Assembly: GCF_001194135.2 (NCBI RefSeq)
Contig: NC_068999.1
Location: forward strand, 43,452,578-43,486,333
Direction: 5' to 3'
DNA: 33,756 nucleotides
Origin: Octopus bimaculoides
Lineage: Eukaryota
The notes under the pieces are model-generated. The model saw nothing but the letters and a program-made list of their open reading frames with translations, had not been told where the DNA came from and did no database searches. A program made the position numbers and the translations under genes. Every line of letters begins with the position of its first letter. Position 1 is the stretch's first letter. Positions 5,255-24,693 of this stretch are shown in pieces.

Positions 5255-5367
5255 TGCCGATGATTGCCAACACTAACCAGCCTGCATCGATGGCAAGTGC
5301 TGCTACTAGCACCACCTCACTTCCTACTAATGCTGCTAGTGTAAATTACTTTGATGAGAACAACCAG
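5255..5367 (+). CDS. mbl: muscleblind internal coding exon E1 (113 nt, phase 1 to phase 0), Ala/Thr/Ser-rich C-terminal-region exon
   Basis: Acceptor cccacAG at 5253-5254 is the first AG after an in-frame TGA at 5239-5241. Donor CAG|GTAGTA at 5368. Translation (x)TG CCG ATG...AAC CAG = VPMIANTNQPASMASAATSTTSLPTNAASVNYFDENNQ. It resembles the recalled human MBNL1 segment [32 protein letters not shown] in start, end and phases, and splices in frame to E2. Confidence 0.85.
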
Positions 5368-16315: not shown

Positions 16316-16350
16316 TTGCTGGACACCCTCCCACTGTGCCGCGATTTTAA
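16316..16350 (+). CDS. mbl: alternative reading frame of E2 (phase-1 entry): xAGHPPTVPRF*
   Basis: TT GCT GGA CAC CCT CCC ACT GTG CCG CGA TTT TAA read from the sequence. Resembles the recalled Drosophila MblC C-terminus FTGHPPGVPRF*. Would be used if E1 is skipped from a phase-1 upstream donor, which is outside the window or not identified. Confidence 0.6.
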
Positions 16351-16400
16351 GTCTAGCCAGTGTAACAGGCCACAATGTAAGTTTGTGCATCTAATGGAGG
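16316..16400 (+). CDS. mbl: muscleblind coding exon E2 (85 nt, phase 0 to phase 1), CCCH zinc finger C-X7-C-X4-C-X3-H
   Basis: Strong acceptor tttatcctttctcttccAG (16314-16315) and consensus donor G|GTAAGT (16401). Translation LLDTLPLCRDFKSSQCNRPQCKFVHLME+G, in frame with E1 and E3. Confidence 0.93.
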
Positions 16401-16590
16401 GTAAGTTTGTTTTCACTCATCACTTTCTATTTATCCATCTACAACTCTATTCATCTTTCTCTCTACATTATTTTTGATAATACAGTTCTATATTTAAGAG
16501 ATGAATTATGTACATTATTTACATTTGGTAGACGGAAACTGAAAGAAGCCCATCGTATATATGTATACATATGTGTGTGTTTGTCCTCCT

Positions 16591-19122: not shown

Positions 19123-19195
19123 ATAATTCTTCATCGTTTTTATTACCTTTATTATCATTAATTTTTTTTTTAATTTTTTTTTTTACAACTTTCAG

Positions 19196-19210
19196 ATTAT
19201 GTTGAAGTGA
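19196..19210 (+). CDS. mbl: alternative reading frame of E3 (phase-0 entry after E2 skipping): IMLK*
   Basis: ATT ATG TTG AAG TGA. An E1-E3 junction gives ...ENNQ|IMLK*, resembling recalled human MBNL2 ...TANQ|IILK*. Confidence 0.55.
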   Translation: MMLK

Positions 19211-19332
19211 CGGAGGGCAAGGTGACTGTGTGCCGTGATTCAGTTAAGGGGAAGTGCCGAAGACACCTGTGCAAATACTATCACATCCCTGTTATATTAT
19301 CAGCCCTTGCTGCTCCCAACTTGACCACTTGA
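19196..19332 (+). CDS. mbl: muscleblind probable terminal coding exon E3, CCCH zinc finger C-X7-C-X4-C-X3-H plus short tail
   Basis: T-rich acceptor ttttttttacaactttcAG (19194-19195). G|AT TAT... = DYVEVTEGKVTVCRDSVKGKCRRHLCKYYHIPVILSALAAPNLTT, TGA at 19330-19332. The inter-finger linker VEVTEGKVTVC matches the MBNL-family pattern (VEVQNGRVTAC / TVTVC..CKYFH). Confidence 0.93.
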
Positions 19333-19440
19333 GAAGCAGCAGCAGCAGCAGCAGCAGCCGACCTACTACTACTACTACTACTACAGCAACTTTCTACTAC
19401 TTCTATTACAACTACATCTGCAACCACTATTACAACTGCA

Positions 19441-19483
<43 letters not shown>

Positions 19484-19558
19484 TTCTTACTGTTATTACT
19501 TCAGTGGACAGTGTTGTTGTTGTTGTTGTCGTCTTTGTTTTATTGCATCACTACAAGA

Positions 19559-19589
<31 letters not shown>

Positions 19590-19647
19590 TATTATTTTTA
19601 GTGGGGAGCCTACACTGATCATTCTAGACTCTCTTACTTTCTCATTC

Positions 19648-19896: not shown

Positions 19897-20635
19897 NNNN
19901 NNNNNNNNNNNNNNNNNNNNNNNNNNNNNNNNNNNNNNNNNNNNNNNNNNNNNNNNNNNNNNNNNNNNNNNNNNNNNNNNNNNNNNNNNNNNNNNNNNNN
20001 NNNNNNNNNNNNNNNNNNNNNNNNNNNNNNNNNNNNNNNNNNNNNNNNNNNNNNNNNNNNNNNNNNNNNNNNNNNNNNNNNNNNNNNNNNNNNNNNNNNN
20101 NNNNNNNNNNNNNNNNNNNNNNNNNNNNNNNNNNNNNNNNNNNNNNNNNNNNNNNNNNNNNNNNNNNNNNNNNNNNNNNNTATATATATATATATATATG
20201 ACCTCCAACACCCCAAACAAAACTTGAAAAAAAAAAACAGGAGAAAAAAATAAATATTAAAGCCCTGACATTTTTTTTCTTATTCAATCCACCATGATGA
20301 TGATGATGATGATAATGATGGTGGTGGTAATGATGATGATGATGATGATGATTATGATGAAGGAGGTGTTGGTGATATTGATGATGATGATGATGATGGT
20401 AGTGCTGGTGGGTTGTATACTTATTTCTTATGCTATTTGAATTTATACACACAAACATACATACATGCACACCCCTGACTGTCAAGTTCAATTACTCTCT
20501 CTCTCTCTCTCCCACACACACATACACACACACGTGCATTTGCACACAAATAAGATATACAAAAGTGCACCCAGTTATGCACATGCACACAGGCCTGTAA
20601 AGATTTTTATGTTTGGTTGCGTGTTTGTGTGCAAC

Positions 20636-22434: not shown

Positions 22435-24693
22435 GTATTTATATATGAACATAAGTATATATTTTCTTGGGTTGATTGTGTATATTTGTTATAAAGTGCA
22501 TTTTCTTTAAAGCTTAACCAGGTTTCTATTTCTTAAATTATGATATTTATGTTATTCCATTCATTGTTTAACACCAGTTGTAACTGATTACAATCATATG
22601 TGTGTATATATGTGAGTGTCCACAAGTGTGTGTCTCTGTGGAGGTTTTTTTTGTTAAATAGAGGGATGTAGGTTATAAATGAACAATTACAATGATGTCA
22701 CTATGATTGTGTGAGTTTGTGGTTTGTATATTTGAGATGCATTCTTCACAATTCAGAATTCTGCTCTGTGTGTGTGTGTGTATGTGTGTGTGCAATTTTC
22801 AAACACATGATTATTTGGTTAGTGGCAGTAGGTCTAATGATTTCTAACTTAGGCACAGACCTACACACTTTTAGGGGAGAATATAGGCAATTCATTCTGA
22901 CTGTTATAATAATAGATTATTTCCCCACAAAGGATCAAAAACAGGACAACACAAAAGAAAAGGGCACAACACTGAGGGTTTACATTAGAACTTGTAAAGC
23001 TAAATAGTGTAAATGGGAATGCCACAAAGAAATATACCCCAGTAATGGGGATAACTAGGGCCAATGAAGGAACCCTATAAATTGTAGATTAACCTGACCA
23101 CCAGTTGTAGCAGATGTCTTTCATTATACATATAGTGAGTTATATATCATTGGAACACTGCTGAAGACTTCTTTTTGTCATGTCTTGTATGTACCTAGGG
23201 CTAGTGAGTTGGCTCACTGTCCAAGCTGTACTCTACCCCTAGGAATGAGTTTGTTAAGTCAACTTTACAAATATGTGAAACACTACTCAGTTACACAATG
23301 CTGCCACTACTTAAAGCAGTCTGTTTCTACCTTACTCTGTGGTAACTATTTTCTTACAAGTTTGGTCTGCGTGACAGTTCATGCAGCATTAAGTACCTTG
23401 CCCATTGGCATGGTGACCTGACCAAAGTGCAAACCAGTGATGTTTAAAGATCATAGCCCTATCATCTTCTTTATCAAGTCATGTATTGGTAGCTCTTATC
23501 TATGTATGTCTACACGCATACAAAACTACATACATGCATAATGTATGTACATCCTCCAAACCCAATTGATTTCATGATACAGTGAAGAATTCTAAAACGT
23601 TCTAGAAATTCTTCATTTTGAGTTTCTCAGAACGAACTTATGCTCACAATCACATGTACATATGACATACAAACGCACTTTACATAAAAAGGAATCAAAA
23701 CACACACACACACACACGAGTATACAAAAATGAACATGCATTCATTACACAATTGTAAGCATATTGATACATATGTATACGGAGACACTGACTCACATAT
23801 TTACCAATTCCCTAAGTCGTCTTGACTTAAACACTTTGACAGTAACCAGCTTCAATTCTGCAAAGAACTTAAATCTCCAGAGAAAACACACACACACACA
23901 CACACATGTGTGTGTGGACATAAGAGTATGGATCCATAAAGTTACACATGCTCTTTCTTGCTTGATACAACCAACCACCAACATTGGTTCAGAAAACAAA
24001 TCTGTTTTACCTTTAATTAGAATATTTGTCTGGAGAAACTGGTTAATTTGATTTTCAGGTCATGACACCAGTCCCCACCGTTGAAGTTGTTAGCTCAAAG
24101 TAGTATTTTTACCACTACACCTACCACCACCACCATCACAATAGTCTCTATTAGACTAACTTTCTTTTCTCCATAAATCCTTTAATCCCCCCCCTTCACT
24201 TCAGCCTCATCATCATCATCATCATATGTGATGAAAGTAAAATGATGGACTAGCAGAGCCAGTGGACTGAAGGACTTAATAAAATGCCTTAATGTATTTT
24301 ATTTTTTCGTCTCTCTTCTCTGGTGGCCATTCTGCATGAGTTCAAATCATGGTTGGAATAAATTTGCTTTACAAATGTTCAGTGGTTGATTTTAAAGACT
24401 GTACCAAGTTACTCACTGGGTTGCCTCTAACCAACTGAACCAGTTTCAAACCTGTGGACTTGAGCCATTGTGAGCCATTGTGAGCAATGGAAACATAAGA
24501 TGTACTTTTAAATGAGAAAATGTACTCACTCTTTGAAAAACTTGAAAGAAAAAAACAATTTAGTTGCTGTTTTTCTTCTTTTGTTTTACAATCTTTTTGT
24601 TGTTGTTGTTGTTGTCATTGTTGTTATTGTTCTGGCTCTTGTTCTTTATCTTGTGTATTCTGTAAAGTTACTATTTTAGCCATCCATGAATAA

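What the first reader, a model, noticed from the sequence alone, without database searches (positions are those of the whole stretch)
19196..19332. Terminal exon also dual-frame; vertebrate MBNL2 alternative tail may be a fossil of this zinc finger
Seen: phase-0 entry gives IMLK* and phase-1 entry gives DYVEVTEGKVTVCRDSVKGKCRRHLCKYYHIPV. Recalled, unverified: the human MBNL2 last exon gives IILK* after ...ANQ, and DNSEIISRNGMECQESALRITKHCYCTYYPV... in the shifted isoform. Ungapped, these share D1, E4, C13-(R/Q)-(D/E)-S16, C26 and Y28-Y29. Inference: the exon and both frames predate the protostome-deuterostome split. Octopus keeps an intact CCCH finger; vertebrates keep a decayed one lacking the second Cys and the His.
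Basis: partly seen in the sequence, partly recalled or inferred. Interest (0 to 1): 0.88.

Follow-up and report, generated by a model that had tools for sequence, protein, structure and literature searches.

The report
Ancient dual-frame muscleblind zinc-finger exon
This octopus exon is the last exon of the muscleblind splicing-factor gene, read in two frames (a four-residue tail or a zinc finger); the same exon exists from corals to hagfish, and the tail of human MBNL2, a myotonic dystrophy gene, is most likely its decayed remnant.

Summary
Window 19196-19332 follows a strong acceptor. It reads IMLK* in phase 0. In phase 1 it reads DYVEVTEGKVTVCRDSVKGKCRRHLCKYYHIPVILSALAAPNLTT*, an intact CX7CX4CX3H finger.

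This finger is the second half of a third tandem CCCH pair in octopus muscleblind. The first half is exon E2 (16316-16400, 85 nt). Upstream exon E1 (5255-5367) corresponds to the vertebrate 95-nt exon.

The recalled human MBNL2 isoforms match database entries exactly.

The pair, and the phase-1 intron before its second finger, occur in coral, molluscs, annelid, arthropods, echinoderms, hemichordate, tunicates and hagfish. Ciona, Styela and hagfish have annotated isoform pairs that use both frames (IMLK*, ILLK*, IT* versus the finger).

Protein similarity between the mammalian tail and the finger is weak (HMM 4.1 bits; hhalign E=0.003). The DNA match is stronger. In exact register from the acceptor, bat MBNL2 matches octopus at 40 of 87 nt, against a background of 21±5. 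Only 2 of 53,760 windows in the bat locus match as well. The tail is most similar to hagfish, including the shared ...Q-x-A-C* end.

Hagfish keep the finger. The frame switch is made differently in vertebrates. The mammalian tail is a published PEST degron.

The parts
5255..5367 (+). Exon E1 (113 nt). It begins with 2 nt of a split codon and ends in phase 0. It encodes (V)PMIANTNQPASMASAATSTTSLPTNAASVNYFDENNQ and is the orthologue of the vertebrate 95-nt alternative exon (VPMM...ATANQ).
   Evidence: Splice sites cacag|TG...CAG|gtagta. tblastn matches to spider, beetle and oyster upstream peptides. Global alignment to the human exon gives z=4.3, p=0.0008, with the same VPM start and NQ end. Both exons have a length of 2 mod 3. 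The leading V assumes a G from an upstream exon that is not in the window.
16316..16400 (+). Exon E2 (85 nt, 1 mod 3). In phase 0 it encodes LLDTLPLCRDFKSSQCNRPQCKFVHLME plus a G, the first finger of the third tandem pair. Including it shifts E3 into the finger frame.
   Evidence: ttccag|TTG...GAGG|gtaagt. 100% match to UniRef A0A0L8GUY8. RNA contig L005 from a close relative joins E2 to E3 at exactly these boundaries. The hagfish equivalent encodes the same 28 residues before the split codon, which implies 85 nt (implied from the transcript, not read from a gene structure).
16337..16390 (+). CCCH motif of finger 5 (C-x7-C-x4-C-x3-H).
   Evidence: Motif scan. Pfam zf-CCCH_10 hit on the pair, 7e-16.
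16316..16350 (+). Alternative reading of E2. Entered in phase 1 it gives (x)AGHPPTVPRF*, a conserved alternative C-terminus.
   Evidence: tblastn to the C-termini of spiralian muscleblind proteins P0181 (...FAGHPPSVPRF) and P0182 (...FAGHPPSVQRF). P0255 has a similar C-terminus...FAGHPTGLQRF. Transcript L005 uses exactly this frame and stop.
19150..19195 (+). Polypyrimidine tract and 3' splice site of E3.
   Evidence: Read directly from the sequence.
19196..19332 (+). Exon E3 in phase 1: DYVEVTEGKVTVCRDSVKGKCRRHLCKYYHIPVILSALAAPNLTT*, the second finger of the third tandem pair. This is the last coding exon.
   Evidence: Pfam zf-CCCH_10, 8e-12. Orthologues from coral to hagfish. The same phase-1 intron lies two residues before VEV in Lottia, Capitella, Daphnia, Stylophora and Ciona. 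A hagfish transcript reads DHVEV at the corresponding junction.
19196..19210 (+). E3 in phase 0: IMLK* (ATT ATG TTG AAG TGA), the short tail made when E1 is joined directly to E3.
   Evidence: Ciona has an identical IMLK*, both in genomic DNA and in isoform XP_078489564.1. Related endings: Phallusia IMLK, Styela ILLK, Lottia NMLK*, human/bird/turtle/carp IILK*, hagfish MBNL2a IALK*, lamprey VLLK*.
19231..19284 (+). CCCH motif of finger 6 (C-x7-C-x4-C-x3-H).
   Evidence: Motif scan.

Best explanation
The window holds the 3' end of the Octopus bimaculoides muscleblind (mbl/MBNL) gene.

Three exons form a switch that couples splicing to reading frame.
- E1 (113 nt, 2 mod 3) restores phase 0.
- E2 (85 nt, 1 mod 3) encodes a CCCH finger.
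- E3 is the last coding exon and is read in two frames.

The possible splice products are:
- E1 joined to E3: the protein ends ...ENNQ-IMLK*.
- E1-E2-E3: a third tandem CCCH pair is added, giving a six-finger protein.
- An upstream exon ending in phase 1 joined directly to E3: a single extra finger is added.
- The same upstream exon joined to E2: the protein ends ...AGHPPTVPRF*.

This module was already present in the ancestor of cnidarians and bilaterians, namely the tandem pair and the phase-1 intron inside it. The short I-x-L-K-stop reading of E3 is shared by molluscs, tunicates and vertebrates.

Hagfish still have the intact pair. In gnathostome MBNL2, E2 is gone and E3 survives. Its phase-0 reading (IILK*) is kept. 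Its phase-1 reading is reached by skipping the 95-nt E1 orthologue. That reading is the old finger with its second Cys and its His lost. It is now disordered and works as a PEST degron.

Shown here: the exon structures, the frames, the isoform pairs, and the in-register DNA similarity.
Inferred: descent of the tail from the finger; use of the phase-0 form in octopus; RNA binding by the third pair.
For: Gene context.
- E2+E3 is a 100% match to an O. bimaculoides model.
- A cephalopod RNA contig that carries a full muscleblind N-terminus joins E2 to E3 at the predicted boundaries.
- The E2+E3 pair matches the solved MBNL1 ZnF3/4 and ZnF1/2 structures at E about 1e-13.

Distribution.
- Full-length proteins with three tandem pairs, or with pairs two and three, occur in Pinctada, Biomphalaria, Eurosta and D. 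simulans.
- They also occur in Stylophora, Glandiceps, Acanthaster, Strongylocentrotus, Anneissia and Apostichopus.
- They occur in Ciona (cDNA-based NP_001071913.1), in Styela, and in the hagfish Myxine/Eptatretus.
- The phase-1 intron is at the same place in coral, Lottia, Capitella, Daphnia and Ciona. A hagfish transcript reads DHVEV at the corresponding junction.

Use of both frames.
- Ciona X3 ends ...GQSQ|IMLK*, while X2 reads ...GQSQ|E2|DYVEIKDDKVTVC...
- Styela: ...ILLK* versus the finger.
- Hagfish...ASQ|IT* versus DHVEVVDDKVTVCRDAAKGKCSRPLCKYYHPQSQAASASALLQFAC*, the latter on an RNA contig.
- Mite, clam and tunicate-like models splice ...IPV(S/T)| directly to the finger. Human isoform 3 does the same with ...FIPT|DNSEI.

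Vertebrate tail.
- The human isoforms are exact and the bat exon DNA is in hand.
- In-register DNA identity is 46%, 44% and 44% to octopus, hagfish and Ciona, against a background of 25%. Empirical p is 4e-5 to 3e-4, with a sharp peak at offset 0.
- Identity by phase-1 codon position is 0.57, 0.45 and 0.31.
- The match is still significant without the first 15 nt.
- Protein similarity is highest to the nearest relative, hagfish (z=5.6, p=0.0004), including the shared ...LLQFAC* versus ...ELPQTAC* end.
- In amniote tails the cysteines that align with finger ligands C1 and C3, plus the YY, are invariant. The other internal cysteine, C24, is not: it is Gly in birds.
- AlphaFold2 gives the tail pLDDT 50 with no secondary structure.
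- Literature: inclusion of the 95-bp exon shifts the frame, and the tail made without it is a PEST degron (PMC9943662, PMC6530876).
Against: - Protein-level similarity of the tail to the finger is weak: HMM 4.1 bits, hhalign probability 10.8%, no Pfam hit even at E<=10.
- tblastn with finger peptides does not recover the bat exon from its 27-kb locus.
- With the first five residues removed, the protein comparison is significant only against hagfish (p=0.016).
- No shark, ray-finned fish, amphibian or amphioxus version of the phase-1 tail was sampled, so the stepwise loss of ligands has not been seen.
- It is unresolved which gnathostome paralogue the hagfish gene corresponds to.
- No octopus transcript or annotation shows E1 joined to E3.
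- An early phase-0 stop is expected by chance in 40-60% of lineages, given the conserved peptide. Only the exact x-M-L-K-stop is unlikely (2-8% per lineage).
- Some protostomes (Daphnia, and the mollusc behind P0186) lack the early stop.
Confidence: 0.82

Rival explanations
1. The exon is orthologous, but the phase-1 tail of gnathostome MBNL2 is effectively new sequence. After the finger isoform was lost, the off-frame drifted freely. It was later recruited as a degron, and the few shared residues (C13, C26, YY) are chance.
For: Protein-level scores are marginal. Pfam finds nothing in the tail. tblastn does not detect it. A lamprey paralogue shows that the phase-1 frame of this exon can lose all finger residues while VLLK* is kept.
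Against: The in-register DNA identity extends over the finger body (30-31 of 72 nt after the first 15; p about 0.001). It is strongest at phase-1 codon positions 1 and 2. There is no indel across 29 codons. The closest match is to hagfish, and both share the terminal Q-x-A-C-stop.
Confidence: 0.1
2. The octopus and vertebrate exons are unrelated. The I-x-L-K-stop start and the exon phases are convergent or coincidental.
For: Only the short length of the shared motif supports this. An early stop in the off-frame of D-Y-V-E-V is common by chance.
Against: The same upstream exon is present in both (VPM...NQ, 2 mod 3). The exon before it ends the same way ((F/Y)IP(T/V)). The phase-1 intron is at the same position from coral to Ciona, and the hagfish transcript has the same junction residues. 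The exon start ATTATGTTGAA is identical in octopus and Ciona. There is a continuous chain of taxa that have both isoforms.
Confidence: 0.03
3. E3 in octopus is used only as the finger exon, or as 3' UTR. The phase-0 IMLK* reading is never translated in protostomes, so dual-frame use arose only in chordates.
For: No protostome isoform ending ...NQ-I-M-L-K was found. In the one cephalopod transcript seen, E3 is untranslated. Daphnia, Capitella and one mollusc lack the MLK-stop.
Against: x-M-L-K-stop needs specific synonymous codons (2-8% by chance per lineage), yet it is present in cephalopods, Lottia and tunicates. My searches were aimed at finger-containing isoforms, so short-tail protostome isoforms would not have been listed.
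Confidence: 0.2

Closest known systems
Human MBNL1 tandem zinc fingers ZnF3/4 and ZnF1/2 (PDB 3D2Q/3D2S, 5U6L, 3D2N, 5U6H/5U9B; MBNL2 2RPP)
   Same: Both have two CCCH fingers joined by a short linker that contains V-x-V. The second finger has CX7CX4CX3H spacing and the motif VTVC.D..KG.C.R..CKY.H. phmmer gives E=1.5e-13 to 1.6e-11 over 60+ residues. Pfam zf-CCCH_10 hits above its cut-off.
   Different: This is a third pair at the C-terminus, not the first or second pair. The first finger has CX4 spacing rather than CX6. The pair is split by a phase-1 intron and is optional. Both of its exons are also read in a second frame.
Drosophila MblF 'second TZF' (Fernandez-Costa et al. 2011, as cited by Irion 2012, PMC3315501)
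   Same: Irion notes that one fly isoform has a divergent extra tandem pair, only 32% identical to the vertebrate second pair. The fly proteins found here (D. simulans XP_016028158.1, Eurosta mbl X27) carry QLLDTLPVCQDFNRSMC...VAVCRDHA...CKYYHIP. This is the same family as the octopus pair.
   Different: I could not read the 2011 review, so equating MblF with this pair is an inference. In flies the exon continues into a long C-terminal extension instead of ending the protein. No link to vertebrate tails is made in the papers I could read.
Mammalian MBNL2 95-bp exon frameshift and PEST tail (Nitschke et al. 2023, PMC9943662; PMC6530876)
   Same: In both, a last coding exon is read in two frames chosen by upstream splicing. 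One frame stops after four codons (IILK*). The other gives a tail of about 42 residues. The exon and its phase are orthologous to octopus E3.
   Different: In mammals the long frame has lost two zinc ligands, is predicted to be disordered, and acts as a degron. It is reached by skipping the E1 orthologue. No E2-like exon was found in the 16.8 kb upstream of the bat exon.
Ciona intestinalis CiMBL ('zinc finger protein', NP_001071913.1; used by Oddo et al. 2016, PMC5041496)
   Same: It has the same E1/E2/E3 layout, the same ATTATGTTGAA exon start, and both IMLK* and finger isoforms annotated.
   Different: Ciona E2 is 142 nt. Its E3 is split by an extra intron and runs on for about 60 residues past the finger. 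Oddo et al. note only that finger number varies among homologues.

Membership tests
Muscleblind/MBNL-type tandem CCCH zinc finger | Two CCCH fingers with CX7CX4-6CX3H spacing, separated by a linker of about 14-17 residues | tested here: met
   Motifs at 16337-16390 and 19231-19284. Both have CX7CX4CX3H spacing, with 15 residues between H and the next C.
Muscleblind/MBNL-type tandem CCCH zinc finger | Significant sequence match to curated profiles and to solved MBNL domains | tested here: met
   Pfam PF22628 scores 57.9 bits against a cut-off of 27. PDB MBNL1/2 chains match at E=1.5e-13 to 1.6e-11.
Muscleblind/MBNL-type tandem CCCH zinc finger | Encoded within a muscleblind gene, on the same mRNA as the canonical N-terminal pair | tested here: met
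   Cephalopod RNA contig L005 carries MAMVNP...RWLTLEVCREFQRNKC... together with E2 and E3. Full-length orthologues exist in oyster, snail, starfish, Ciona and hagfish. The N-terminal exons lie outside this window.
Muscleblind/MBNL-type tandem CCCH zinc finger | Binds zinc and YGCY-type RNA | not testable with these tools
   This needs a metal and RNA-binding assay. The AlphaFold2 model reached only pLDDT 65, and Foldseek was uninformative.
MBNL2-type dual-frame last exon | Preceded by an alternative exon of length 2 mod 3 that begins VPM and ends NQ | tested here: met
   E1 at 5255-5367 is 113 nt. Its alignment to the human 95-nt exon gives p=0.0008.
MBNL2-type dual-frame last exon | Phase 0 gives I-x-L-K-stop immediately after the acceptor, and phase 1 is open for about 40 codons | tested here: met
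   IMLK* and a 45-codon ORF. Bat/human give IILK* and 42 codons.
MBNL2-type dual-frame last exon | Both frames are used in real mRNAs of the same species | tested here: inconclusive
   Met for human (PMC9943662), Ciona, Styela and hagfish. For octopus there is only the finger-frame model and a relative's transcript in which E3 is untranslated. No E1|E3 junction was seen.
MBNL2-type dual-frame last exon | Sequence homology of the exon itself | tested here: met
   In-register DNA identity is 40/87 against a background of 21.4±5.1, the joint best of 53,760 windows (only one other window ties), with a peak only at offset 0.
PEST degron of the MBNL2 tail | P/E/S/T-rich final 18 residues that destabilise the protein | not tested
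   The octopus tail after the finger (IPVILSALAAPNLTT) does not resemble ...YYPVSSSIELPQTAC. No degron prediction or assay was run. I do not file the octopus exon under this family.

The most novel reading that the evidence does not exclude
The amniote MBNL2 tail may not be simply a dead finger. It may be a rewired metal site. Across mammals, platypus and birds, exactly three Cys and one His are invariant (C13, H23, C26, C42). C42 is the terminal Cys, which hagfish also have after their intact finger. These four could still bind zinc in a new arrangement, so that metal occupancy would control exposure of the PEST degron and hence MBNL2 stability.
Probability: 0.07. Interest if true: 0.85.

Novelty: new variant of a known kind. 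Interest (0 to 1): 0.7.

Why it matters
MBNL proteins are central to myotonic dystrophy and are described as four-finger proteins in vertebrates and as two- or four-finger proteins in invertebrates.

The data here suggest that the ancestral animal muscleblind gene encoded an optional third tandem pair, giving six fingers. The pair sits on two 3' exons that are each read in two frames. This splicing-coupled frame switch appears to predate the split of protostomes and deuterostomes.

This gives an origin for the MBNL2 tail, whose degron activity underlies the compensation seen when MBNL1 is lost.

It identifies hagfish and tunicates as living intermediates.

It also predicts that six-finger isoforms in most animals have distinct RNA-binding properties that have not yet been studied.

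Finally, many genome annotations call this pair a separate small gene. One spider annotation even names it a toxin.

Tried and rejected
- tblastn of octopus, Lottia, Capitella, beetle and clam E1/E2/E3 peptides against the 27-kb bat MBNL2 locus. It recovered neither the terminal exon nor any relic of E2 or E1. The 95-nt exon lies further upstream than the fetched DNA.
- The first exon of the Myotis 72-aa model looks like a spurious prediction, not a cassette exon.
- Early stops in the off-frame as evidence of selection. I rejected this because they are expected in 40-60% of lineages by chance. Only the exact MLK-stop is informative.
- Foldseek of the AlphaFold2 model of the octopus pair against the PDB. 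There were no meaningful hits, because this is a small metal-dependent fold and the model reached only pLDDT 65.
- Genomic look-ups for Glandiceps isoform X4 and Ciona isoform X3 failed, because only the longest product of a gene is indexed. Ciona was then reached through its longest isoform.
- The exon upstream of E1 (...YQQA...IPVT) was not found in the window.
- Literature searches for a third tandem pair, six fingers, or an evolutionary origin of the MBNL2 tail found nothing relevant.
- I first suspected the octopus pair was simply the orthologue of vertebrate ZnF3/4. I rejected this because oyster, snail, fly, starfish, Ciona and hagfish proteins carry ZnF3/4 and this pair together.

Full report
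**What is at the coordinates**

The window is Octopus bimaculoides genomic DNA. It is AT-rich, full of microsatellites, and contains 3,726 N in assembly gaps.

At 19190-19195 a long pyrimidine tract ends in tttcag.
- From 19196, phase 0 reads ATT ATG TTG AAG TGA = IMLK*.
- With one G carried over from the previous exon, phase 1 reads DYVEVTEGKVTVCRDSVKGKCRRHLCKYYHIPVILSALAAPNLTT*, with its stop at 19330-19332.
- The CCCH motif (C-x7-C-x4-C-x3-H) is at 19231-19284.

**Gene context in the window**

A second CCCH motif lies at 16337-16390, inside an 85-nt exon (E2, 16316-16400; ttccag|TTG...GAGG|gtaagt). E2 encodes LLDTLPLCRDFKSSQCNRPQCKFVHLME plus one G. That G is the base needed to read E3 as D-Y-V-E-V. 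So E2+E3 encode a tandem CCCH pair, and this pair is a 100% match to UniRef A0A0L8GUY8.

Further upstream, exon E1 (5255-5367, 113 nt; cacag|TG...CAG|gtagta) encodes (V)PMIANTNQPASMASAATSTTSLPTNAASVNYFDENNQ.

An RNA contig from a close cephalopod relative (L005) carries a complete muscleblind N-terminus. It joins E2 to E3 exactly as predicted. It maps to 16316-16407 at 90% identity and to 19195-19415 at 76% identity.

In that transcript E1 is skipped, so E2 is read in its other frame and ends the protein with FAGHPPSVPRF*. The same ending (AGHPPTVPRF*, 16316-16350) is encoded in the window. It also ends several spiralian muscleblind proteins. So E2 is dual-frame too.

**The family**

The pair matches solved MBNL1 ZnF3/4 and ZnF1/2 domains at E about 1e-13. 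It also matches Pfam zf-CCCH_10 well above the cut-off.

It is not the orthologue of vertebrate ZnF3/4. An exhaustive profile search found full-length muscleblind proteins that carry pairs one and two and this pair as a third, C-terminal one. Named examples:
- Pinctada and Biomphalaria
- Eurosta
- the coral Stylophora
- the hemichordate Glandiceps
- Acanthaster
- Ciona (including the cDNA-based NP_001071913.1) and Styela

Related models carry this pair with only one of the canonical pairs, or as part of an incomplete model: Strongylocentrotus, Anneissia, Apostichopus and D. simulans.

Two hagfishes have it as well. Myxine glutinosa MBNL1 isoform X5 ends ...IPSVGASQ|STDTLTICRDFKSGHCARPNCRFLHLLE|DHVEVVDDKVTVCRDAAKGKCSRPLCKYYHPQSQAASASALLQFAC*. 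A 1,577-nt RNA contig from another hagfish carries the equivalent 432-residue ORF uninterrupted. Its product differs from the Myxine protein at a few residues upstream and is identical over this pair.

In many genomes the pair is annotated as an orphan protein of 70-140 residues.

Irion (2012, PMC3315501) mentions a fly isoform, MblF, with a divergent extra pair. The fly proteins found here carry this family of pair.

**Exon structure across animals**

The intron between the two fingers is in phase 1 and lies two residues before V-E-V. This holds in Lottia, Capitella, Daphnia, the coral Stylophora and Ciona. A hagfish transcript reads DHVEV at the corresponding junction.

- The hagfish E2 equivalent encodes the same 28 residues before the split codon as octopus E2, which implies 85 nt. 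Ciona E2 is 142 nt. Both lengths are 1 mod 3.
- E1 begins xP(M/I)(M/I) and ends NQ or SQ in octopus, human, lamprey and carp. Its length is 2 mod 3 in octopus (113 nt) and human (95 nt).
- The exon before E1 ends (F/Y)IP(T/V) plus one base in human, clam and cephalopod.

**Use of both frames**

- Ciona isoform X3 ends ...LLNGQSQ|IMLK*. Isoform X2 reads ...GQSQ|E2|DYVEIKDDKVTVCRNF... In the genome, E3 starts acag|ATTATGTTGAAATAA.
- Phallusia ends IMLK.
- Styela has ILLK* and the finger form.
- Eptatretus has an isoform ending ...ASQ|IT*. This is exactly the phase-0 reading of the hagfish finger exon, ATC ACG TAG.
- A second hagfish paralogue ends ...STNQ|IALK*.
- A lamprey paralogue ends VLLK*, and its phase-1 frame has no cysteine left.
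- Lottia reads NMLK*.

Given the conserved peptide, an early off-frame stop is expected in about half of lineages, so it carries no weight. The exact x-M-L-K-stop needs particular synonymous codons. Its chance probability is 2-8% per lineage, yet it is present in cephalopods, a gastropod and tunicates.

**The vertebrate side**

The three human MBNL2 isoforms I wrote from memory are exact database entries:
- isoform 1, ...ATANQIILK
- isoform 7
- isoform 3, ...AAFIPTDNSEIISRNGMECQESALRITKHCYCTYYPVSSSIELPQTAC

In bat genomic DNA the exon begins aacag|ATAATTCTGAAATAA.

Two papers show that the 95-nt exon sets the frame. They also show that the long tail, made when that exon is skipped, carries a PEST degron in its last 18 residues (PMC9943662, PMC6530876).

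So gnathostomes reach phase 1 by skipping the E1 orthologue, not by including an E2. No E2 relic was found in the 16.8 kb upstream of the bat exon.

**Testing the fossil idea**

As protein, the signal is weak.
- The HMM of 77 finger exons scores the tail at 4.1 bits (E=0.0017 for one target; shuffle p 0.012-0.016). The alignment runs 13-34 to 13-34.
- hhalign of amniote tails against 19 fingers gives E=0.0029, aligned 1-33 to 1-33 without gaps.
- Pfam sees nothing in the tail.
- Pairwise, the tail is closest to the nearest relative with an intact finger. Against hagfish z=5.6 and p=0.0004, or p=0.016 without the first five residues. The two also share the end ...LLQFAC* versus ...ELPQTAC*.

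As DNA, the signal is clear.
- Ungapped from the acceptor over 87 nt, the bat exon matches octopus at 40, hagfish at 38 and Ciona at 38 positions. The background is 21.4±5.1.
- Among all 53,760 windows of the bat locus, only 2, 5 and 14 reach those values.
- Shifting the register by 1-9 nt in either direction drops the count to 16-27.
- Identity is 0.57, 0.45 and 0.31 at phase-1 codon positions 1, 2 and 3, as expected for a former coding frame.
- Leaving out the first 15 nt, which are also constrained by the phase-0 peptide, the match is still 30/72 (p=0.0015) and 31/72 (p=0.0008).

In amniote tails, C13, C26, Y28 and Y29 are invariant. These are the positions of finger ligands 1 and 3 and of the YY. 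C24 is Gly in birds. Positions 21 and 30, which hold ligands 2 and 4 in the finger, are T/A and P.

AlphaFold2 predicts the tail to be unstructured, with pLDDT 50.

**Conclusion**

The exon, its splice phase and its two readings are ancestral to bilaterians. The pair and the intron go back at least to the cnidarian-bilaterian ancestor.

The gnathostome MBNL2 tail is most probably the decayed second finger of the third pair, later used as a degron.

Remaining gaps:
- No cartilaginous fish, ray-finned fish, amphibian or amphioxus phase-1 tails were sampled.
- The paralogy of the cyclostome genes is unresolved.
- There is no direct evidence that octopus makes the E1|E3 (IMLK) form.

I found no paper that describes the third pair as a conserved feature or that links it to the MBNL2 tail. 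My literature access is limited to open-access full text.

Noticed in passing
window 16316-16350: E2 is dual-frame as well. Read in phase 1 it gives (x)AGHPPTVPRF*. This ending terminates spiralian muscleblind proteins P0181 and P0182 and the ORF of the cephalopod transcript L005. P0255 has a similar ending.
   Followed up: partly
L003:36575-36625 (Lethenteron reissneri): A 51-nt in-frame exon (LQHGGLTALDPEDERYH) sits between the E1-like exon and the VLLK* exon, at the position of E2. It might be a relic of the first finger, but the similarity is too weak to say.
   Followed up: no
P0292/P0293 (Myxine glutinosa, 'zinc finger protein 724-like'): RefSeq models join the whole hagfish muscleblind ORF, up to the end of E2, to a downstream C2H2 zinc-finger gene. 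This is either read-through or chimeric annotation, or a real fusion transcript.
   Followed up: no
P0006 (Liphistius spider): The spider orthologue of the E2+E3 pair is named 'U64-Liphistoxin-Lsp1a_1' in UniRef. This looks like a mislabelled venom-gland transcript of muscleblind, not a toxin.
   Followed up: no
P0140 (Closterium), P0126 (Eutreptiella), P0134, P0150: Proteins from a green alga and a euglenid, plus two from unidentified sources, rank among the best hits. They have 6-8 muscleblind-like CCCH fingers, and in P0140 and P0150 the closest match to the third pair is at the C-terminus. This could be contamination, or a much older family than the animals.
   Followed up: no
L005:~830-925: The cephalopod transcript contains two tandem copies of a 14-residue segment (YSSTKLNEIQPYFT) between the ...YIPVT exon and E2. 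This is either a duplicated micro-exon or an assembly artefact. No counterpart was found in the window.
   Followed up: no
P0186 (unidentified mollusc-like model): This gene model reads E2 in the third frame and E3 in phase 0 without a stop (...SWRIMLKCRMEGYL...). It is probably an annotation artefact. It shows that the phase-0 stop after MLK is missing in that species.
   Followed up: no
L004:23667-23720 and 24214-24419 (Ciona): In Ciona the finger exon is split by an extra intron after ...CRNFLQG. The ORF continues about 60 residues past the finger, so in tunicates the phase-1 ORF continues into a further exon beyond E3.
   Followed up: partly
P0198 (Anguilla) C-terminus: An eel MBNL1-like model ends ...DSDNICRSSD. 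From memory, human MBNL1 has a short alternative tail of similar form. Its I-C-R-x-S could correspond to the V-C-R-D-S of the finger after a deletion, which would make it a second, shorter fossil. This was not tested.
   Followed up: no
window 19333-19600: Immediately after the E3 stop there are long (CAG)n, (TAC)n and (ATT)n microsatellites. The first part is shared with the relative's transcript 3' UTR (L005). The first AATAAA is at 20249.
   Followed up: partly
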